Origin: Ylistrum balloti
Taxonomy: Eukaryota
Assembly: GCF_031769215.1 (NCBI RefSeq)
Contig: NW_026781893.1
Coordinates: 744,001-808,000, forward strand
Length of the DNA stretch: 64,000 nucleotides
Reading direction: 5' to 3'
The position numbers and the translations under genes were made by a program. Positions 46,691-61,717 of this stretch are shown piece after piece (position 1 is the first letter of the stretch; every line of letters starts with the position of its first letter). The notes under the pieces are model-generated. The model was not told the DNA's origin. It made no database searches and was given only the letters and a program-made list of their open reading frames with translations.

Positions 46691-48271
46691 AATGAGATCT
46701 TAAGTATCAAACATAATAAAGAAAGAACTAATTTGTTAGATCTAGATTATAAATAGTTATTCTCAATACGGAAAGAACTAGGACGAAAACCACGTATAAG
46801 ATCTCGTTAGATTAAGATTAGGTAAAGTATCAACGTCGTAAGATTTTGTTAACCATAATGCCGAATAATCGTAGAAAGCACATGCCCAGTCGTGGTAGAT
46901 TATTATAGTCATCATTTGTCGAGATTTATCATAGAGAAAAACATTTAGTATGCTATAAATGATATAACTGTACATCTATTTCCCTGTGTATATTGAGTGT
47001 GACAGGAGACGCGAACCATGGCGAGGATTATATCAGAAAGTCCGTCCCATCAATCAGAACACTTGTTCGTTACAATGAATGAATCTTTAACGGTTGATTT
47101 TGAGTCTCAGTTGGGGAATACTTTTTCTAAAAAATATTGATTGGTGGTACAACAATTATAGAATGTTGTGGGAAATGTCCTCTGTGTTTTTATCTATTTA
47201 TCAATTATTTAATCAAGTTTTAGAGAGTTTTTAACCATCACTGCTATAAATGGGACCCAATTCTGTTTTCGGCCATCGCTCCCAAATTGTACGGTTTCCC
47301 CTTTCTCACCCCTTGAACTTTATCGAGTGTTGTTTTGAAATGCACACAAATCAACAAGCAATGTGCGTCTTACGTTATCGGTGATGGTCTGTAATCACCT
47401 GAGAGCCAGCCCATAGTTGTCGCCTGCTCAAATCGACCGCCAAACCTTTGCGTAAGTTATTTTTCTATCATTATCTCGGTTTTCAGTTTTAAAAAAATCA
47501 CTAGGACTAGTAAATGTGCATTCTTCTCAGACGAGTCAATATAACACCATATTTGATGATAAATTGTTATGGCGCTTATCTATTTCCCGATCATATGTTC
47601 AGGACCATATGCTTGTTTACGCATAGCAAAAATCGCTGATCAGAAAAAAAATAATTTTCATTATATTACGAGAGGAGGGCCATTGATCACTTTATATGAT
47701 CTATTACCGACCGATATCCCTGTTGTGTTGAAAATTTTCGTGTCAAAAAGTATGTTTTTACATATAACACAACTACTTTAACAAAGTCACTCCTTAATAA
47801 GATAAAGACCTTTTAAACTTTACGTTATGACAAACGGAAATGGAATGAAAATCATTGTTTAATGACAGGATTCTCATAAGACTTTTGATAAGTCGTTTCT
47901 CGTCTAATTTTTAGTGCTATTGTATCAGGACTTTAATAATGCATGAAAAAAGTGTGATGTCTATTCGTTAAATGTGACTAAATCCAGTTGTACAATATTT
48001 CCCATGAATGTAACATACTGCATATATCATTCGAATGAGAAAACAAACTTTAAAAGTCTGTATCGATTCCACTGGGAAATTTCGTAAATAGCTGACCATA
48101 ATTCTACCTCGTTATACTTTATCCGGATTTTAAGTATGCCGCAAGTTGCCACTGATTATTCAGTTTCAAATCCACAGAAAATTCACATTTTCTAAATTGC
48201 TTTTTGTGTATGTTTTTTTTTTTTTTTTGCAATATCATAGTTATTTCAATATACTGTTCTTTCATTGTAGA

Positions 48272-49459
48272 ATGTGTGTGGCGATTTATCTCCTGTGTGT
48301 AATCGGGCTGACCCGAGCTCAAGAGAGACTCAATGATCTTCAGTTCCGTTCGTTTGGAAATCCGACGTCTGCAACGCAATTGCAAAGATCTGCTCAACAA
48401 TTTCGGATCCCTACCGCATTTCCAAATGGATTTCATTCACCTAGTATTTCTCCGGCTCTAATTCGACACAATATCGCAGGACCGAATCCGTTTGGAAGAA
48501 ATAGGAACAGTTTGATGAACTCCAATGGTTTATTGATGATGTTTCCGACCCAGGCTGGTCGCTTGATTCCAGGATTGGCCTTTAATCGTCCAGCACCGTT
48601 ATCATCTGTCCTTCAAAGACCTGCGTTCCCTTTTACACCACCAAGTGTACATCGACTTAACAGAGGACGTAATGCTATAAGTGAAAATTCAGGACAGCGT
48701 TTGGCTGGATTAAACCAAGATCGCCCATCTCTTTCGGGGATGCGCCGACCTAATGGTGTTACTCCCAGAGGGCAAAACGTCGTACCTCAGACAAGACCCT
48801 CATCATCGCAACCACGAAATCCTGCAACATCGGACAAGGCAACGCAAAGAATTGTCGACTTTATATTGGGGAAGAAGAGTCAAAACACCAACCAAAACCC
48901 TATACAGCCTACTGTAGATACTATAAGTAATGTAGAGATGGCCAAACCACCTCCAAGAAAGTCGGTGTTTCCAAATCCAACAGGACTGTCCACAAATGTC
49001 GTAGACATTAATAAAGCATCACCCGAAATCCGTTTTAAATCAAGGACTGACGAGGAAATAAGGCAAGAAGTAGAGGAAAGAATGAGACAGCTTAATGCAT
49101 TTCTCGCCAGAAATCCAGCAGCCATAGCATCTCCAATCCATAATGTGGTAAACAACCATCATTTACCTCATAACATCCGGCATTATTTCAATAATGTCAA
49201 TCGCCGTACGGAACGAGTCGACCAAAACACTTTGAACACAAGAGTCATGGAAGCATTCAAAAACCGCGACAAAAGTGGTAAAAAACCAATTGTAGTTGAT
49301 GGTGGTGTCGCAGAGCAAGTGATGCCTACCATTGTCGTCGATGGAGGTGTTTCATGGAGAAACCAAGGTATTCATCTTGACCAAAACCAGCGACCACGTG
49401 CATTTAATCTAGAAACGGACAAAGAGCTTGCCAAGCTCTTTCCAATTCCTCCATCATAA
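48272..49459 (+). CDS. Orphan secreted Asn/Pro/Arg/Gln-rich low-complexity protein, 395 aa
   Basis: Acceptor TTCTTTCATTGTAG ends at 48270, then ATG at 48272. Signal-peptide-like MCVAIYLLCVIGLTRA|Q. Single 1188-bp open frame with GC content above the flanks. AATAAA at about 49765 and 49794. The longer ORF start at 48146 runs through intron-like poly(T) sequence. Confidence 0.85.
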   Translation: MCVAIYLLCVIGLTRAQERLNDLQFRSFGNPTSATQLQRSAQQFRIPTAFPNGFHSPSISPALIRHNIAGPNPFGRNRNSLMNSNGLLMMFPTQAGRLIPGLAFNRPAPLSSVLQRPAFPFTPPSVHRLNRGRNAISENSGQRLAGLNQDRPSLSGMRRPNGVTPRGQNVVPQTRPSSSQPRNPATSDKATQRIVDFILGKKSQNTNQNPIQPTVDTISNVEMAKPPPRKSVFPNPTGLSTNVVDINKASPEIRFKSRTDEEIRQEVEERMRQLNAFLARNPAAIASPIHNVVNNHHLPHNIRHYFNNVNRRTERVDQNTLNTRVMEAFKNRDKSGKKPIVVDGGVAEQVMPTIVVDGGVSWRNQGIHLDQNQRPRAFNLETDKELAKLFPIPPS

Positions 49460-50080: not shown

Positions 50081-51295
50081 TGCTGATTGGGAAACCAATC
50101 CTTATCAAACAACATGTATATTTTTCCATTGAAATAATAACATTACTGATCCATATGAAAATGCAAATTGGGGTTTGTTACTCTTGTGAGCATTTGAGAT
50201 ATTAATATATATATTCAAAATTACTTCTGGTTTTTGTTTGTTTCTCTGAAACGTTATGGCATCTCCTGTCGATTTCAGTTATTTATCGACACCGTGTTCT
50301 GATTGATCTGTTTACGACAAACTCTATCAATGAGATATTTGACGTTCATATGACATAAGATATTGAATGAGGGGGACCCACTTCCGAGTTACCTTAACCA
50401 CATGTCCATGACGGCTGAGTGGTGATCACCTATATGGTGGGTTCAATGGCTGTTTACTGTTATCATCTGATCTCGATCGTTGCGTCGTTTATTGTAACGC
50501 TCTGTTGGCCAAGCAATGATTAATGATTGTTTGCCCTGAAGGCTACGTCAGATGTCGTGTTTCTAACTATTAATGCAAGGTTTTTACAACAGCATGTTTT
50601 GTATTGAAGTTATTTTAGAAGGTTTTGTGTATTTTTTGTTGTTGTTGTCCCGATGATATGTTGAATATCATCACCATATGTCATTACTATCGAGTGGTGA
50701 CTTATTATCTGTTTTAATTCTCAGGATGTAAACAATGTATACACATAAATCTGGAAAAAGGATTACTATATGTACGCCGTTCCATAATCACTGCGGTAAT
50801 TAGAAACATGAGCCTTTCCATCAGGTTTACCGTAGCATATCCTGCTTATGTGGTTATCGAAATTTGATAGTTTGTGAATGTGCCGTATTTGATTGTAGGC
50901 GTTAAACTTTTTAATCAGGTGTCATGACGTCATTCTTTCCCTTTGACTTCCTTTTATGCTAATCTACATGTCACATCTTCATTTAATGCAAATGTACCTT
51001 TTTAAATTTTGAAATTATCAGATATATGAAGATTACGAGAGTATTGAAATTTCCATCACTCCATCTAGATGTTGACTTTCTTTCGATCAGTTTGGATTTT
51101 CCTCAGTCGCCTGTATAATACATTTTAATTTATCATTTGGCTCTTTCCTAAATTTGTATCAGAAGGTGCTATTCAATTATATGTTTGTTGTACAATCATT
51201 GAACTTTATAAAATACATGGAATCATTGGGTTGGTGCACCGCCCCATTTATTTCAACAATTTTTTACCCAAGTTGCCTCCTTGGTTTCAACATTT

Positions 51296-51358
51296 TAGGA
51301 CCTGACGAGTCCAGAAAGGACGCAACAGCTGTGTGACGCATTATATGGCTGTATTCTA
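51296..51358 (+). ncRNA. Type I hammerhead-ribozyme-like motif, copy 1 (core GAAA changed to GCAA)
   Basis: TAGGA-C-CTGACGA-GTCC(agaaa)GGAC-GCAA, then a 12-bp stem III with 4 G-U pairs and loop CGCA, then GTA-TTCTA. All three stems pair. Confidence 0.8.
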
Positions 51359-52966
51359 TTTTAAACTTTTATTGAACAGTGTTTTTTATTTCTTTAACAA
51401 TATTTTCCTATTTGTTCCAGTTTGTAATGACTACTGCCGTATTTGTTTTACAGATAAACAAATAAACAGATTGGCACTGTGCTTCCAGTTTATCATAATG
51501 GGTTTTTATTACGGTCACAATATATAATTATGACACACTACCTCTGTAGTACCTCTCATGACAAAACATACCTTAATATCACAACATTTCTATCTTATTA
51601 ATTTGCTTCTTGCACAATTAAGTTTTATTATTACACTTAAGTTTTGTAACTTTCTTAATAATTTTCAGTTCTTTGCAGCAACATTTCTCTAGATATTGTT
51701 GAACAATGGAAATTGCTCAATTATTAGCACACAAAGCATGAGTACTGATAAATATTACTTACATCATGGAAAGCAAAAGTAGGATAGAAAGGCACACTTC
51801 CATAGTAATTATCATTTGCTGGATCAAACATTTCAAAAACTTCTGAAAGGGAGAGCTGTCCCTTACCAAACCAGTTGCAGTTGTTTTCTTATTCAAATCA
51901 TAAATAAACTTTCCTTTGTTTAGATAAATCAAAATTTATTTATACCGATACCAAAACATTTGACTGGATACTTATTCTATTGACCCAAGGCCATGTATAT
52001 GGACATGTTGATTCATCTGCCAGTTTCTATCCTCTACAGAAGTCATCATCCTTTTCGTTTCCATGCTCATAATAATGACGTTGCAATGACCACTCCGCTA
52101 AAAGTCATTAATTGTACAATGAATCTCACTCCTTTTTGTCCAGAATGTTAATATTATGGCTTTACATTTGGTTCGGGGTTTTTTTTTCGATTAAATTTAT
52201 ACAATTATGGTTTGTTAAATCTCACCTTTCCGTCCTCGTCTTTCCGAGTTTTATTTTTCTGTATGACCAAAATGACGATCTCAAAATCACTACGGTGAAT
52301 AATTTCGCCTCTCAATACCTTTCTGGACATCGTCTAGCCGTAAGTTCATTCACGTGCGAGTACATAATCCGCAGCCCTCCAAATAACTCTTGGAAAGATT
52401 GAAGTTCAAGTCACCAACTCTCATTCTATAAAGTGTATCTCATAAAGAAACGAAATTACAGATGATATATATATTTTATGAAATAAGTCATATATACAAT
52501 AATTAAGTGAGATGTATTATATACTATATGAGGTAAGATAACTCATATAGAAATTAAATGAGACATTTTAAACTATATGTGAGTTAGGCATACGAGATAT
52601 CTAATATATTATATGATATATATTGTATAGTATAAATGGTTTGCCATACTTATTGGCTTACTTCACTATTGAGTGATGACGTAGGTTTAAATCATATCAG
52701 TTTGTTTCGACATTGTCATTCTGTGACATTGATTGATATTGTAAAGTTTGTTCTTACAGCTACCGATATTTTATGCTGCGGTATATTCTGTTAATACATT
52801 TTGATACTCTAGCATATTTGTTAAAGGTGTGTTGTGCTGTTATAAAATGTACATTTTGACATTAAAATATAGGGATTTCGTCCCTACATGCGGTCATATT
52901 TCGTATGTGAAATTCTACAAAAGATACGCAAGTTATTAGCGAACACCTTTTGAGACAAATTCGGAC

Positions 52967-53078
52967 TTAGATACAGTTGGGCTAAAAAGTGAATTAAACG
53001 TCATTTTCCAGCTGATTCGTCCTTCTAGAACTCGTCTGTAACGACAAGCTTAAAGCATTGCAACCTAAGAGGCGATTG
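52967..53078 (-). ncRNA. Type I hammerhead-ribozyme-like element, copy 2 (degenerate)
   Basis: Minus strand: CAATCGCCTCTTAGGTTGCAA...CAGACGA-GTTC(tagaa)GGAC-GAAT-CAGCTGG...CCAACTG-TA-TCTAA. Colinear with copy 1. Confidence 0.7.
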
Positions 53079-55361
53079 AGAAATATCGAAGGTGATCGAA
53101 AGTTGCACTAGTCTAATGCATCATTGGAATATACCTACCAACACCGTATTACAAGTTATAGATATTTAGACGTGTCTTTTTAATCATATATATATATACA
53201 CATGTATATCAATTTTAAATAAAACAAGTTTTAAATTGATGTGAGTCATCTATCTTAAATATATCAATTCGACAGTTAAAGGTAAAAACATCACTTTGTG
53301 TAAAGTTATTTCACTCGGTGTTAATAATGTTTCAGTCTGTCACGTATCGACATTATTTTAAGAACAAAAAACTTTTTAAAACCATAGGGGTTCTTTCATA
53401 TCAACTACACTAAGACGTTAATTTTTTGTATATGATTTTTGCACGAAAAGAAAGCAGGCGTTCATCATACAAGACGTTTATTTTATTACTGTGATATAGT
53501 CGACGATAAAACGGTCATAACCAACCTTACACAAAATATTGTCTAGATGTCTCTGTGAAAGTAAAAGGATACATGGATCAGATAACCATGAAACAAATAT
53601 ATTAAGAAAGGATAGGGAAAACATGCGTGTGGTTACTTATTCCTATGATAATTTTTTTTTTCGTTGAGGCAAAAAGATACACAAACAACAAGATAGTACT
53701 TACAGAAATGTCAACAAAACAGTCATATCGAAGAAACATGGACAACATTTAAAAAAGGAAAAATTTAGATGCGGAAAAAAGAACATGGAAAACACGACCA
53801 GTTGTTCGAGGAGGGTACGCGTCTTCTTCTTCATGGACGACACTCGTCATAAAAATTTGGGAAAATCCAAGATAAAGTAACGCAGATGAAAATTAAATTT
53901 GTAACGATGGAAAAATGATGTTTTCAAATTGGCAACTCTATATTGGCAATAACTGGAACTCGCATATCTGGAATTTCTTGGTCCTGTGCTCAATTTTAAA
54001 TAATGCCATGATAGCCATGATAATAAAGTATACTTATTCATTAGTACACATTCCAATTGTTCTTGAACCAACTGGGTGTTAGTAGTTATCTTTTGGTGTC
54101 ATGCTGTAATGATACCGAACATAAATTCTAATCTATCACTTGTACATTTAACAAATCTGACCACAGATGAGGTCTTTGGAGGGCTAATTCATCGATGTTT
54201 GAAAATCATCATCATTTATATGTTAAGTGATACCGCCAAGGGATAGGCTGAAGGACATCACTTTATAGTTTTAGAAAAGTAAGAGAAGATTCATCAATTT
54301 TTACTGATTGACTTTGCTCTCTGCAGATGGCTCTGTTTTTTTAACCTTCTGATCAAAACAGTCTGCTTCTACAAGTCGGTACTTCACATGTTGTGAAAAT
54401 TCTCATTCCGACAGTTTCTGATTATATGTAGTCACAATCTTAGGATATCCTTAATTATATCAATACAAGATTGTTATTCTTGGAGAATTCTACAAGAATT
54501 CAAATGCTGAAGACGTCAACAAAACGACTTAAAGATTACTTTTTTAGTAATTGTTCGGTCAATGTTAGCCTGTAGATCTGAGTGTTTGCCCTAACCAGGA
54601 TCTCTTTGTGCGATTTGAAGCTAGACGTGTTTGATGTTCATTGTCTTGCATGTTGGTTCCGTTGTTGTATACCTTGTTCTTATGTTCTTGAGAACGTGAC
54701 ATTACATACCTGGATCGATCAAGGTTTACATGTAGGGTGTGGTTGATGAAGCACCTGGTCTTATTCTCTTTGTACTGTTTCAGGAGTTTCCGTGTAAATC
54801 TTTCATTTGTTCATATTTGCCCTGGTTTTATTGTGTTTGGATAATGATGATGTTCACATGTTGGTATGTTCTTATTGTTTTTATATTAGCTACCAGAACC
54901 TCTAACTCTGACAGGACGTCTTGCACAACACGACAAATGTCTAATTTTTCGTCTTTTGTGAACCGTTGGTGCTTGTCTATGTTTTTTCTCTCTCTGAATT
55001 TAGCTGCTCCCTTCTTTGTACAAAATGCAGCCAAAAGGTAGAGTTATGCACACAATGACCATGCTATTGTAACATCTAACGCTGTGACTCAAAGCTGACT
55101 GAACATGTGAATAGAGTGTATGTCAGTAAGGTCAAACATCTCTCATTATAGATGTATCATACAAAAAAGTTGTTTACAACTACAATTTAAGTACAGTACA
55201 TTGATGAGGCATACGACTTTCTGACCGCTATTGAAGCATCACAGCCCTTGATGGTAAAGGTCACTTGTTTCATTCAATTAGAACTGCACGTTTGATCAAC
55301 CAAATGGACAAATGTTAGACTATCAGTCGTTCTTGTCTAGTGGTATTCTGGGTGTTGCGGG

Positions 55362-55405: not shown

Positions 55406-58400
55406 ATGGCACAAACTCATAGGTAAGTTCAGGCGTTTACTGAAAACAACATCTATTCATGTTTATAAACAAATCTCGAACATATTTCGATCTATTTTAA
55501 GATTCCGTATGACATTGACCATGATGTTTATCATGTAACATTTATTGAATATTTAAATAATCGGAACTTTCTTAGTTTTTTGTTTATTAACGATGTTTAC
55601 CTGGCATTAACATTACGCTAAATTAGATCTGATGACATAGGCTAATCTAATTGTTCCGCGTGAAAATATATCGTTTAAAATTTCAAAGGATATTTATTTT
55701 ATTTTATTTATTTTTTTATATCTTTAATGTATTTTCTGTCACTGCAAAATACCGTAAAATAAAAACATGCGCGCACGTTCGTTCTGACAATTATTGATGT
55801 ACTCTTGAAGATCTACAATTTTTTCAATCTAGTTCCTTCACCATATTTTGAATTTTTGGTTCTACAGCTGGACTTTCTGATATTTTCAATATGGAAATAC
55901 CATGACTTTCTGAAATTGACAGGGGTAGTTCATTGCTTTACAGCTGCGTAATACACCGAAAATTTAGGCTGTCAATCAACATGGATTTTATCGATCCATT
56001 ACTCCTCCAAAGACCATGGCGTGTCCCAGAAGGTTTCGAATTGTTCTCAAAGCAGTAGTCTTTGTTCAACAACGCGACCGCAAGTTATGGCAAAACCGCT
56101 TCTAAATGGACATGTCAACAATAAAGGAGATCAAAGGTGTCATCTTGTGTTAGGCAAATGCAAGAGCTCTGAGCTCAGCAAGTAAGCCGCTTCTAATTGT
56201 AACTCGTTCTAGGATGAGTCAAGGTTTTAGCGTTCTGAAGACCCAGGCGACCTTGTGCTTATATCGGTGTCCACAAACGCATTTAAGATACTTGTGTTAT
56301 ACCGAATTGTCGTACTGTGATCGGTCATTATACACTAAAGATTTTCGCATAGTATTGTGATCAATGTGGTCTTTGTCGAATTGTCAATACCGTTTATATA
56401 GACCATATTCAAGCAATACAAGAAGATATTTTACTAGGAAAGCATCAACAACACGCCTTGCCACATACTTGTGACTTTGCTATAGGTTTCAAACGGCAAG
56501 GTTACCAGATTAGAATGAGATGGAGACCGAAACTTCTGACGAACGTCTCTCGTATAGCGGTGGGTAAACAAGATAATAGTTTGTCAAGGCGAATAGTAAC
56601 ATTAAAGTGCATAAAGGAGTTTGTGCTTATAGTGCATCTCCTCAAGGTATGCAAGATATTAATGTGTGACACAGAAAATTAATTGGCAATCCAAACTTGT
56701 TTTCTGAACATAACAATAGAATTATTACATAAGTTGAATATGTTACTTTAACAAACTGTAGTTGACTGGTATATTAAGAAGTGTGTTCCGTTTTCTTTTG
56801 TGTGTGTATGCCATAACTTAATTTTCCTGAGAGTGTTTTGTACAATCTAAAAGAGAGATGCAATATCGTTAGATGTGTAGAAAGAACATATAAAACAAAA
56901 AGAAAAGATAAATGAGAGTAAAAGATATTTAATTGAGGACATTAACTAGATATGTAATTTAAATATCGTTGACAACATAGCCATACAGCTCTTAGGTGTT
57001 TTCCATGATAATGGTGCTTTTCGGTCACGGTGGTTTATCTAGAATTCTTAAAGACCATGTTGCAATTTAGCCTTATGTTTATTCATTTCTGATAATTGCA
57101 TTATTTCAATCTGTTTTAGGATAATCATCATGGAAAAAAGAAAAAGGTCGATTAAATTTCTTTGTATCATCGGGTATTTGCAAAGCGTAGTTTCATCTGT
57201 GAATGCGTTACCGCCCGCGGTGGAACAACCCAATGACCCAGGAACAAACATTTTACCTATAACGCCCCCCAAAACAGCCGACGTGACCAATAGCGTTTTC
57301 AGCCTCACAGCCAGTTCTGAAGGCACACGTTCAGTAAATTCTGACCCAAATTTTGCGAGCGCAGAAAAAATGATCAACAATGCCATAAATCCCCAAGTGT
57401 CCAATGAGGCTACAAAATTCATCGCAGCTGACGAAACACCTCTCGCATTTCGCCGATTTCGCGCGGAATTGTCATCTTCACAGTCTACCAACTCGAATAT
57501 CGGAGATGGGTCGAAAAGTGTGTCCTCAATAACAACAACACAGGGCAACACAGATATCGATCGAGCAACATCAACGGCTAATAATGGAAGAGCGTTAGGA
57601 GGATTCATTGCAACTGTTGCGTCACCTCCTTCACAGATATCAAGTGGAGTTCAGTTTATGCCTTCAGCAATGAGATATGCCATACGACCACCAGGAGTGC
57701 AATTTTCAACGCTTGACTTGACCGGTTTGTCATCGCGTCCGCCTATACTGTCGTATATACCTTCTGCTTCATTTTCTGCTCCTGTTGCACAGTCGAACTC
57801 CATCCGCTTACTTCCTAAAACGTTCCGTACATTTTATCAAAATACACCGACATCCCCAATCCTGCCTTTTGTTGGTTCTAATTCTGGATTATCGTCTTTG
57901 TCTTTTCCACCAACACCTATGGAAGTGCCGCCAATTTCATCTTTCTCTTCTCCTATCCCGATTCACCAGCAGCAGCAGCGACAACAACAAATTTCTTCAG
58001 TGCCAACAGTAACTGTTTCTGAATCCCCTAGTGTAACCTTTTCTTCTGCACCTATTTCAACATCTGTAAGTCCTTCTATTCCATCCAGCCAAATCTCCTA
58101 TGCTCCCAAACCACCTCTCACTAGTCTCACGACAGTCAATATGATACCTGGTCCACCGAAGACCGTATTTCAATCACCACCTCCACCTCAAACGACTGTT
58201 ACAACATTTGCTAACTCTCCGGGTCCTTCTCCACAGACCATGCAACTACAACCATTTCGGCCTCTAGCAACTGTAACAGCATCCTCTGACACTATACCTC
58301 CTCCATCGCAGACCATACAATTTCAATCACCACCTCAAACGACTGTTACAACATTTCCTAACTCTCCAGGTCCTTCTCCACCGGCCGTACAGCGACGAAC

Positions 58401-59890
58401 ATTTCGTCCTCAAACGACTCTTACAGCATTTGCTAACTATCCAGGTCCTTCCCCACAGGCCATACAACTACAACCAATTCGGCCTCTAGCAACTGTTACA
58501 GCATCCTCTGACACTCTTCCTCCTCCTACGCATACCGTACAATTTCAATCACCACCTCCACCTCAAACGACTATTACAACATTTCTTAACTCTCCAGGTC
58601 CTTCTCCACCAGCCATACAAACACTTCATCCTCAAGCGACTGTAACAACATTCTCTAACACTCCACTTCCTCCTCCTCCAACCATACAATTACAGTCATC
58701 ACCTCCAACTGCGATTGAGACACCAGTGCAAGCATCTACAGTAATGACGCCTCAACCCCCAATAAACATTGCTCCATTGTCTTCGATGGGCGTAGGTCCT
58801 TCATCCGTACCATCCTTTACATCAATTCCTTTATATCACACAGCAGTACAAGCCCCAGGTATTGCGCCGCTTTCATTCCCATTGGCTTCAGGCACACAAA
58901 ATATTTTTGGAGTAGGTATGTCACCCCCTTTCGTTGGTCAAGAAGGCGGTTTTGGTACCAACTTTGGAAGTGTGGGAATAGGAGGAGGAGGAGCAGGCGG
59001 AGGAGAAATTATGGGAACAAATTCCGGCACTCTACCAGCCGCAGTCTCTTCAATATCTCGGTCATTCAATGAGTTCTTGTCACCAATCATGTCAGCGTTT
59101 GAGGTATGCTTAAATGTTGGCACCAAAGATCTCTCTTTAACATGTCAAAAATATACTAGTAAGATTTCGTCTGAATAATTCTTACTACAAATGATACGTT
59201 ACGATACAATAAAGTGTAGGTAGTGATGGTTCTCGTGTAGATAACTGTTATAGTTAAGGTGTAGTAAGTGATTCTAAACATGTAAATCACTATTATCTAA
59301 GATATCATATAGTGTATTTAGAGGTGGTTCACGTGTTAATAACAATTGTGGAAGTGCGATACATTATATATTAACGTAACGGTCATTTATCTAGAAAATA
59401 TACATTAACAATATGTCATACAACACCCGGTATTAAAAGGAATAGCCCTTAAAGAAATAGTATAGCTTATCCTTGCTGTTCATATAGGAGAGACGTCATG
59501 GCAGTGTCTTCGAACAGTCCTACGTTCTCAGTTGTCTGCCACTTGAATTTCATTATCATTATGAGATTGCCGTCTTGTTTAGATATTTGCGATATTCGAT
59601 TAGATCTATTTTATATGAGAACATGTCATTACTTATTTCTGATCAAGATATACAACATAGATATCGTCCATGAAGTAAAAGACGCTTTACCTTTCGGAAC
59701 CTGCTCTTATTCTCCTTTTACTATCAAAAAGACCTACAAATCATATGTTTGCGTATGCCTCATTGATTATGAGTTTGAATGAAGATTTCTTTAACATACC
59801 TGTATTTTCTTCTTGTTTTAAAACCATGTTTTGGTATATTTTATGTGTATGTCTGATATCTTTTATTCATTCAATTTTCAGGCATTTTAA
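55406..59890 (+). CDS. Orphan secreted Pro/Ser/Thr-rich (extensin/mucin-like) protein, 660-669 aa
   Basis: Exons 55406-55422 (MAQTHR, phase 2), 57120-59103 and 59882-59890 (AF*). The alternative start is ATG 57130. Signal-like KRKRSIKFLCIIGYLQSVVSSVNA|LPP. The 2-kb open frame has internal ~25-aa repeats and a Gly-rich tail. The small first and last exons are less certain than exon 2. Confidence 0.8.
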
Positions 59891-60940: not shown

Positions 60941-61623
60941 ATTCCACAACGTACTTTAATTAATGAACGCGATTGAGAAATCAAATCAACATGTCGAAAT
61001 TTCAAACCCAATATTGTTTCAATGGGTTGTGAGAATGCCATTTTTTCGCGGGTATAAGAACAATGAAAATATCTATACTTTGGAGTGATACCATATGGAT
61101 CTTGATGAAGTGGTACAGCCAGTTAGCTACCAAGTCATGTGATTTATCACACCAGTACAATGGACATCACTACAACGACACGAGAGAATACTTTCTGATG
61201 GAACTCATCGCATATTAAAAACAAAACAATAGATGGAAACATGAATATTTTCAAAAAAGCTTGAGTGATATATTTATGCTACCAATAAATTAATTTTACT
61301 TGTTTTTTTTTTAAATACAACAAATAAAGTGTGAAATAATAAGCAGTTTTTTTTTATAGCTTTTTGAGATAGTGGTAGTGAGGTAGTGAGCACGAATGGT
61401 GGACTGTAGTCCCGAGAATATAATTTCATTTAACACTTAAATCCGTAGCGTCACACCGATTAACGGTACTCTTCAATATATACATATTTACAATACATTA
61501 TTTTCAGAAATTCACTAAATTTTGGATTTTAGGAAATTTAACGAAAAAAAACGTTATGCGCCTCTCTATGATAAATCCTTTGTTTCGGAATAACGGTGTA
61601 AGTGCCAGCCGACATTTTATCCT

Positions 61624-61717
61624 CACGTTTGCCCTCTCGGTTTCCATATCTTGGGCATCGACACGAAAGCCCGGAAGGACGAAACAGTTGTATGTTTTTT
61701 TCATATACTATATCCGA
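61624..61717 (+). ncRNA. Type I hammerhead-ribozyme-like element, copy 3 (CUGANGA scrambled)
   Basis: CACGTTTGCCCTCTCGGTTTCCATATCTTGGG...GCCC(ggaa)GGAC-GAAA-CAGTTGTATG(T-loop)CATATACT-A-TA-TCCGA. Colinear with copy 1. Confidence 0.65.

What the first reader, a model, noticed from the sequence alone, without database searches (positions are those of the whole stretch)
51269..51358. Near-intact type I hammerhead ribozyme in intergenic DNA
Seen: CTGACGA core; 4-bp stem II; 12-bp stem III; GUA cleavage triplet (cut predicted after 51353); 5-bp stem I (UAGGA/UUCUA). The single core defect is GAAA to GCAA at 51323. There is an extra C between stem I and CUGA, which is unusual. Established: the core consensus is CUGANGA...GAAA...UH, and type I hammerheads occur in metazoan retrozymes and PLEs. 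Inference: a recently inactivated monomer, or an allele one base from activity.
Basis: partly seen in the sequence, partly recalled or inferred. Interest (0 to 1): 0.75.

Follow-up and report, generated by a model that had tools for sequence, protein, structure and literature searches.

The report
Decayed hammerhead relic in scallop repeat
The motif is real and descends from a self-cutting hammerhead RNA, but it is an old, several-times-broken copy inside one of thousands of small mobile-element relics in this scallop genome, so it is ordinary.

Summary
It is not a chance motif. A model built from its own repeat family scores it 30.1 bits (E 6e-5), and a profile of the whole element aligns 51200-51389 at E 1.6e-20. 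Rfam's Hammerhead_1 gives only 16.8 bits, against a threshold of 34.

The stretch is one copy of a non-coding unit of about 366 nt carrying a type I hammerhead. The family has thousands of copies, a sharp 3' end and variable 5' truncation, and its ribozyme module often expands into 45-nt arrays. It most resembles animal non-LTR retrozymes.

In the family's own register the ribozyme uses helix I GCAUCA/UGAUGC and cuts at the GUA directly after ACAGCUGU. This copy has lost the 5' strand of helix I to a 10-nt deletion, has C at A13, and has G at the cleavage position.

The copy is 73.9% identical to the family consensus. Thirty-four reference copies have a median of 87.6%. Four DNA runs all carry C at 51323. 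So it is not "one base from activity" and was not recently inactivated.

The scan has noted this family and its 45-nt arrays many times elsewhere in this genome.

The parts
51296..51358 (+). It comprises stem I UAGGA/UUCUA, an extra C at 51301, the core CUGACGA, helix II, GCAA, a 12-bp hairpin and a distal GUA.
   Evidence: Sequence read; fold.
51286..51344 (+). The same ribozyme relic in the family's own register. A13 is C (51323). U16.1 is 51332. Position 17 is G (51333). The helix I 3' strand is UGACGC (51334-39). The helix I 5' strand is mostly deleted.
   Evidence: Family model R1 gives 30.1 bits, E 6e-5, with 4 of 6 helix I pairs flagged as non-standard. Intact members score 55-79 bits.
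51200..51389 (+). Copy B of the ~366-nt repeat unit. It is 5'-truncated and has internal deletions of 16, 10, 10 and 5 nt. It contains the finding.
   Evidence: nhmmer aligns it to profile positions 161-389 at E 1.6e-20. Identity to the consensus is 73.9%, with 45 of 229 consensus positions missing.
50985..51201 (+). Copy A of the same unit, lying directly head-to-tail before copy B. Its entire hammerhead module (59 profile positions) is deleted at the 51111/51112 junction.
   Evidence: nhmmer aligns profile 119-257 to 50985-51112 and profile 317-414 to 51111-51201. The head segment is 94% identical to L054.
52910..53102 (-). Copy C of the same unit on the opposite strand. Its hammerhead relic at 53054-52996 reads CAGACGA and GAAU.
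   Evidence: nhmmer E 1.3e-32; R1 43.2 bits; sequence.
61620..61695 (+). A strongly decayed fourth relic of the same module. CUGA is lost; GGAAGGACGAAACAGUUGUA is retained.
   Evidence: nhmmer E 8.1e-6; R1 19.7 bits at 61649-61700; sequence.

Best explanation
Window 51296-51358 is the dead ribozyme module of an old, truncated copy (copy B, 51200-51389) of a non-coding, AT-rich dispersed repeat of about 366 nt. The host is a 648-Mb animal genome that earlier scan notes call a scallop.

Shown:
- Intact family members encode a canonical metazoan type I hammerhead. It has a 6-bp helix I, the core CUGACGA, a 4-bp helix II GUCC/GGAC, GAA, and a weak palindromic helix III (ACAGCUGU), and it cuts after GUA.
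- The family has a sharp 3' end, variable 5' truncation and head-to-tail partial tandems.

Inferred from the literature on such elements:
- The element is transcribed.
- The hammerhead, probably acting as a dimer across tandem units, cuts out unit-length RNA.
- That RNA is copied back into DNA by a reverse transcriptase supplied in trans.

After insertion the copies decay neutrally. This copy has lost the 5' strand of helix I, has A13 changed to C and position 17 changed to G, and has no intact partner unit nearby. It most likely does nothing.
For: - **Family membership.** BLAST and nhmmer show homology to many genomic copies.
- **Ribozyme family in the genome.** Rfam RF00163 scores 27 genomic members above its gathering score, up to 41.6 bits, with about 100,000 first-look candidates.
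- **Family register.** A 36-copy alignment defines it. By sequence criteria 11 of 36 copies are still intact and 25 are broken.
- **No selection after insertion.** There is no covariation: 89.6% of cells are paired, the same as in shuffles.
- **Model scores.** R1 gives 30.1 bits here and 55-79 bits for intact units.
The deletions that create stems I and III are specific to this copy.
- **Divergence.** 73.9% identity and K2P 0.33, against a median of 87.6% and 0.14.
- **Retroposition signature.** Sharp 3' end with gradual 5' loss of conservation.
- **Cleavage triplet.** Genome-wide, the exact 24-mer with GUA occurs 534 times and the one with GUG 51 times.
- **Population check.** Four DNA contig sets from two studies all have C at 51323 and C at 51301.
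- **No coding partner nearby.** No RT or GIY-YIG ORF lies near the window copy or in the ±1.5-kb flanks of about 85 family copies.
- **Literature.** Type I hammerheads with weak palindromic helix III, dimeric action, and ~350-390-bp mussel retrozymes are described in PMC4209133 and PMC7229834.
Against: - No cleavage assay was done and no RNA data were found; one search listed no RNA run. Inactivity is therefore inferred from conserved-core rules, not measured.
- The copy may belong to a divergent sub-lineage, since L002, L003, L005 and L008 share GUG. If so, distance to my consensus overstates its age.
- Logan contigs drop rare variants, so a rare A allele at 51323 is not excluded.
- The autonomous partner was not identified. 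The one GIY-YIG tandem element I inspected has no hammerhead.
- CircRNA formation, the defining behaviour of retrozymes, is untested.
Confidence: 0.9

Rival explanations
1. One reading: a near-intact monomeric type I hammerhead that cuts after 51353, is one substitution (51323) from activity, was recently inactivated, or is still active as an allele.
For: All the listed pieces are present. Helices II and III fold as drawn. The distal CUGUA in the tail is conserved across the family.
Against: - The family consensus does not support this register. The consensus tail pairs only 4 bp with ACAG, and its 3' flank does not pair with GCAUCA (my reading of the alignment).
- The long stem III and stem I arise from copy-specific deletions.
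- The extra C at 51301 sits at the junction of helix I and the core. To my knowledge natural hammerheads have no nucleotide there.
- Stem I is absent from the minimum-energy fold.
- The copy is the most diverged measured.
- C at 51323 is fixed in 4 of 4 runs.
- Rfam gives 16.8 bits against a threshold of 34.
Confidence: 0.03
2. A chance match to a relaxed hammerhead descriptor in AT-rich non-coding DNA.
For: The Rfam score is below threshold, with E 0.29 on only 351 nt. The fold z-score is -1.79.
Against: Homology extends well beyond the core to a repeat family whose intact members are bona fide hammerheads. nhmmer gives E 1.6e-20, R1 gives E 6e-5, and BLAST hits are.
Confidence: 0.01
3. The family is not a free-standing retrozyme or SINE-like element. 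It is the terminal repeat (pLTR) of an autonomous Penelope-like element, and this copy is a solo pLTR fragment.
For: PLE terminal repeats carry type I hammerheads with a weak palindromic helix III that may act as dimers (PMC4209133). The genome has many GIY-YIG ORFs, some of 755 aa in 5.36-kb tandems. A 2026 preprint derives animal retrozymes from pLTRs (10.64898/2026.07.22.740005). Partial head-to-tail tandems also occur here.
Against: - No RT or GIY-YIG domain was found in stop-free frames of 150 aa or more in the ±1.5-kb flanks of about 85 family copies, or near the window copies.
- The inspected GIY-YIG tandem element has no hammerhead by R1 or Rfam.
- Helix II is 4 bp and helix I is 6 bp, which is the canonical type. 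The min-HHRs first described in Schistosoma PLEs have a 7-8-bp helix II (PMC4209133).
Confidence: 0.06

Closest known systems
Metazoan non-LTR retrozymes (Cervera and de la Pena 2020, PMC7229834), e.g. the ~350-390-bp Mytilus galloprovincialis repeat
   Same: Both have a type I hammerhead in a non-coding, low-GC unit. GC is 33% here and the unit is about 366 nt. Both have thousands of copies, head-to-tail arrangement, no ORF and a bivalve host.
   Different: CircRNA expression is untested here. Most copies are dispersed single units with 5' truncation, not long arrays of whole units. The ribozyme module alone expands into 45-nt arrays. Sequence similarity to the mussel element was not tested. 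The window copy is dead.
Minimal hammerheads of Penelope-like element terminal repeats (Cervera and de la Pena 2014, PMC4209133)
   Same: Both have type I topology, a very weak palindromic helix III implying dimeric action, massive copy number, rapid decay, and co-occurrence with GIY-YIG retroelements in the genome.
   Different: No adjoining RT/EN ORF was found. The helix sizes are the canonical ones, 6 bp for helix I and 4 bp for helix II, not a long helix II.
Rfam RF00163 Hammerhead_1 (type I hammerhead model)
   Same: The core and helix II nearly match the Rfam consensus: CUGAcGAGUCC...GGACGAAAC. Family members reach 34-41.6 bits.
   Different: The window copy scores 16.8 bits. It lacks helix I in the alignment and has C at A13.

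Membership tests
Hammerhead ribozyme, type I (RF00163) | 5' core strand CUGANGA | tested here: met
   CUGACGA at 51302-51308.
Hammerhead ribozyme, type I (RF00163) | 3' core strand G12-A13-A14 followed by A15.1 | tested here: not met
   The sequence is GCAA at 51322-25, with C at position 13. C is present in all four DNA runs.
Hammerhead ribozyme, type I (RF00163) | Cleavage triplet N-U-H, where position 17 is not G | tested here: not met
In the family register, U16.1 is 51332 and position 17 is G at 51333.
Hammerhead ribozyme, type I (RF00163) | Helix II with a G10.1-C11.1 closing pair | tested here: met
   GUCC/GGAC, 4 bp.
Hammerhead ribozyme, type I (RF00163) | Helix I directly abutting C3 and the cleavage site | tested here: not met
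In the family register 4 of 6 pairs are non-standard after a 10-nt deletion.
Hammerhead ribozyme, type I (RF00163) | Reaches the Rfam gathering score of 34 bits | tested here: not met
   16.8 bits. No hit at gathering threshold anywhere in the window.
Hammerhead ribozyme, type I (RF00163) | Self-cleavage | not testable with these tools
   This needs an in vitro transcription and cleavage assay.
Metazoan non-LTR retrozyme | Non-coding unit of about 150-450 bp containing a type I hammerhead | tested here: met
   This holds for the family: a unit of about 366 nt, a hammerhead and no ORF. In the window copy the ribozyme is degenerate.
Metazoan non-LTR retrozyme | Tandem head-to-tail arrangement of units | tested here: inconclusive
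   Copies A and B abut head-to-tail, and several loci carry more than one unit length. Most of the copies I saw are single, 5'-truncated units. The long arrays are of the 45-nt module only.
Metazoan non-LTR retrozyme | Low GC, below 45% | tested here: met
   GC is 32.8% over 50985-51389.
Metazoan non-LTR retrozyme | Expressed and processed into small circular RNAs | not testable with these tools
   No RNA run holds the stretch.
Penelope-like element (pLTR) | Adjacent ORF with RT and GIY-YIG endonuclease | tested here: not met
   No such domains near the window copies or in the flanks of about 85 family copies. The flanks reached only ±1.5 kb.

The most novel reading that the evidence does not exclude
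The two tail deletions and the linker deletion have by accident rebuilt a monomeric hammerhead with a stable 12-bp helix III. The family normally lacks such a helix and needs dimers. On this reading the copy would cut after 51353 but for the C at 51323, or a rare allele would still do so. That would be a natural example of a ribozyme re-wired by indels within a decaying repeat.
Probability: 0.03. Interest if true: 0.45.

Novelty: new member of a known kind. Interest (0 to 1): 0.15.

Why it matters
On its own this copy matters little. It is one broken copy among thousands, and 25 of 36 sampled sister copies are broken too.

Its use is as a worked example. A hammerhead-like motif should be judged in the register of its repeat family, not by a free-standing descriptor. 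Here copy-specific deletions produced a convincing but spurious 'almost active' fold.

The family is of moderate interest and has already been noted many times by this scan. It is a scallop retrozyme-like element whose ribozyme module expands into 45-nt arrays. I found no description of it in the held literature.

Tried and rejected
- **Rfam at gathering threshold, whole window:** nothing found.
- **Rfam in E-value mode:** only a partial, sub-threshold Hammerhead_1 match, plus two chance matches to SAM-II and ceN54.
- **Repeat search in 49-54 kb:** mostly noise. One inverted pair (51080-51112 with 53070-53102) pointed to copy C.
- **Link to Penelope-like elements:**
  - The one tandem element I fetched (C422, L087) has no hammerhead by R1 or Rfam.
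  - Long frames in family flanks held only a Tc1-type HTH transposase and a sulfotransferase.
- **Literature search 'hammerhead' + 'scallop':** returned only shark papers. The search 'hammerhead ribozyme' + 'bivalve' found nothing on scallop hammerheads.
- **RNA evidence:** no RNA run holds the stretch.
- **Covariation test on the family:** none found, so it cannot support or refute the structure.
- **Neighbouring ORFs** 48146-49459 and 57130-59178: no Pfam family.
- **In-silico rescoring of an altered sequence:** not attempted. Infernal is not available in scripts, and I did not type sequences into tools.

Full report
**1. The observation**

The + strand at 51296-51358 reads UAGGA-C-CUGACGA-GUCC-AGAAA-GGAC-GCAA-[hairpin]-GUA-UUCUA.
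- The core CUGACGA is at 51302-08.
- Helix II has 4 bp.
- GCAA has C at 51323.
- A hairpin pairs 51325-36 with 51341-52. It has 12 bp, 4 of them G-U, and a CGCA loop.
- GUA is at 51351-53.
- A possible 5-bp stem I is present, with an extra C at 51301.

RNAfold reproduces helices II and III but not stem I. The fold is not unusual for its composition: z -1.79, with 11 of 200 shuffles folding as well. In a wider context nothing stands out, with z -0.59.

Rfam finds nothing in the window at gathering threshold. In E-value mode Hammerhead_1 (RF00163) matches 51302-51333 at 16.8 bits against a gathering score of 34, E 0.29. The match covers only model positions 7-39, that is the core and helix II.

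**2. It is not a chance motif: it belongs to a repeat family**

Searching the window's own genome with 51200-51420 found related stretches on many contigs. The genome is 648.5 Mb in 1372 contigs, and the window is C36:744001-808000. The hits include 45-bp-period tandem arrays of the core.

RF00163 run on the genome gives 27 hits above the gathering score, up to 41.6 bits, and about 100,000 first-look candidates, mostly in such arrays.

Alignments of dispersed copies show one common architecture:
- a leader or "head", ...CTAGATTTTGACTTTCTTTCGATCACTTTGGATTTTCCTCAGTCGCCT;
- a linker, CCTAGGCTTCAAAATTTAGGCCCTTA;
- one or many 45-nt hammerhead units;
- a tail ending sharply in ...TTTTGTACAATCTT.

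L054 shows a head, 22 units and a tail. L025 and L041 have a single unit.

Column conservation falls gradually towards the 5' end and stops abruptly at the 3' end. That is the signature of retroposed, 5'-truncated copies. Spacing of the landmark motifs gives a unit of about 366 nt. A search with a single-unit copy had 3566 first-look candidates, and the best hits were only 77-80% identical to it. The family is large and old.

**3. The family's real hammerhead**

A 36-copy alignment (A2) gives the consensus GCAUCA-CUGACGA-GUCC-UAGAA-GGAC-GAA-ACAGCUGU-A-UGAUGC. This corresponds to:
- a 6-bp helix I;
- a 4-bp helix II closed by G10.1-C11.1;
- a helix III of only A-U and C-G pairs around the palindromic loop AGCU;
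- cleavage after GUA.

This is the "canonical metazoan type I" design. Its weak palindromic helix III is thought to require two units acting as a dimer (PMC4209133; PMC7761336).

Among dispersed copies there is no compensatory change. The fraction of paired cells, 89.6%, equals that of column shuffles. By sequence criteria only 11 of 36 copies are still intact. The copies therefore decay neutrally after insertion.

Genome-wide, the exact 24-mer with GUA at the cleavage site occurs 534 times and the one with GUG 51 times.

**4. The window copy in that register**

A covariance model built from A2 (R1) finds three copies in the window:

| Coordinates | Strand | Score |
|---|---|---|
| 53054-52996 | - | 43.2 bits |
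| 51286-51344 | + | 30.1 bits, E 6e-5 |
| 61649-61700 | + | 19.7 bits |

Intact members elsewhere score 55-79 bits.

A profile of the whole unit run with nhmmer resolves the anatomy.
- **Copy A** spans 50985-51201. Its hammerhead module, 59 profile positions, is cleanly deleted at 51111/51112.
- **Copy B** follows directly head-to-tail at 51200-51389 and contains the finding. It has four deletions:
  - 16 nt in the head;
  - 10 nt that remove the 5' strand of helix I;
  - 10 nt and 5 nt in the tail.

In the family register copy B has C at A13 (51323), G at position 17 (51333), and 4 of 6 helix I pairs broken. By the established core rules these are each disabling. The conserved core nucleotides are required, and position 17 must not be G. 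I take these rules from my own knowledge of hammerhead mutagenesis; I did not test them here.

A lone unit of this design would probably also need a partner unit. Copy A has lost its own module, and copy C lies 1.7 kb away on the other strand. This last point is inference.

**5. Age and polymorphism**

Over profile positions 161-389, copy B is 73.9% identical to the family consensus (K2P 0.33), and 45 of 229 positions are deleted. Thirty-four reference copies have a median of 87.6% (K2P 0.14) and a minimum of 79.1%.

The reference copies were picked as best hits to one well-kept copy, which favours well-preserved ones. Copy B may also belong to a side lineage, since L002, L003, L005 and L008 share GUG. 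The absolute age is therefore uncertain. "Recently inactivated" is nevertheless not tenable.

Contigs of four public DNA runs from two studies, three labelled organism A and one organism B, span the locus at about 99% identity. All carry C at 51323 and C at 51301. Differences nearby are at three positions:
- 51245, in all four runs;
- 51270, in all four runs;
- 51338, G>A at a CpG, heterozygous in X2 and present in X5.

Contigs drop rare variants, so a rare allele is not excluded. No RNA run holds the stretch.

**6. What kind of element**

The family matches the description of metazoan non-LTR retrozymes. Those have a type I hammerhead, a non-coding low-GC unit of a few hundred bases, head-to-tail copies, and in mussels 350-390 bp repeats (PMC7229834). 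GC here is 32.8%.

The defining circular RNAs could not be tested.

A link to Penelope-like elements is plausible from the literature (PMC4209133; preprint 10.64898/2026.07.22.740005), and GIY-YIG ORFs are present in the genome. I found no direct link, however:
- the one tandem GIY-YIG element fetched has no hammerhead;
- no RT/EN domain lies in the ±1.5-kb flanks of about 85 family copies;
- none lies near the window copies.

**7. Verdict**

It is wrong about state. This is an old relic with several lesions whose "almost intact" look is produced by deletions, not a ribozyme one base from activity.

Earlier notes of this scan had already described the dispersed leader-plus-hammerhead family in this window and the 45-nt arrays at many other places in this genome. 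My results agree with them and were obtained independently of them.

Noticed in passing
L054:1585-2600; L006:1400-2100; also G000:C36:1273684-1274411 (same contig, outside the window): The family's ribozyme module expands into tandem arrays of complete 45-nt hammerhead units, from 1 to at least 22 units between the same head and tail. In the arrays, helix I is closed by a UAG or UAA loop, so each unit can also be read as a type III hammerhead. I found no description of such short units in the held literature. Earlier scan notes report them many times.
   Followed up: partly
window 51111-51112: Copy A has lost exactly the hammerhead module (59 profile positions) between ...CGCCT and CTGTA..., at a short CT overlap. 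The head and tail are left joined.
   Followed up: partly
window 53102-52910 (-): A better-preserved copy of the same unit lies on the opposite strand (nhmmer E 1.3e-32). Its hammerhead is also dead, reading CAGACGA and GAAU, with GGA at the cleavage triplet.
   Followed up: yes
window 61620-61700 (+): A fourth, strongly decayed relic of the module. The CUGA strand is lost.
   Followed up: yes
G000:C422:240415-261997 (L087 = 245700-251400): Five tandem units with a 5.36-kb period, four of which hold an open 755-aa frame with a GIY-YIG domain (the unit at 240415 holds 425 aa). No hammerhead is found by R1 or Rfam. This may be a hammerhead-less Penelope-like (Naiad-type) element, but I did not characterise it.
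   Followed up: partly
window 51245, 51270, 51338: The assembly differs from all four public DNA runs at 51245 (C, others A) and 51270 (A, others C). Position 51338 is a G/A polymorphism at a CpG.
   Followed up: no
window 48146-49459 (+) and 57130-59178 (+): Two long Pro/Ser/Thr-rich open frames of 437 and 682 aa flank the repeat cluster. Neither has a Pfam match. I did not check whether they are exons of one gene, so 'intergenic' is unverified.
   Followed up: partly
family consensus: linker AAAUUUAG and tail CUAAAUUU (e.g. L025:1484-1582): An 8-nt perfect complement brackets the hammerhead plus tail in the family consensus. It may be part of a larger rod-like fold of the unit RNA.
   Followed up: no
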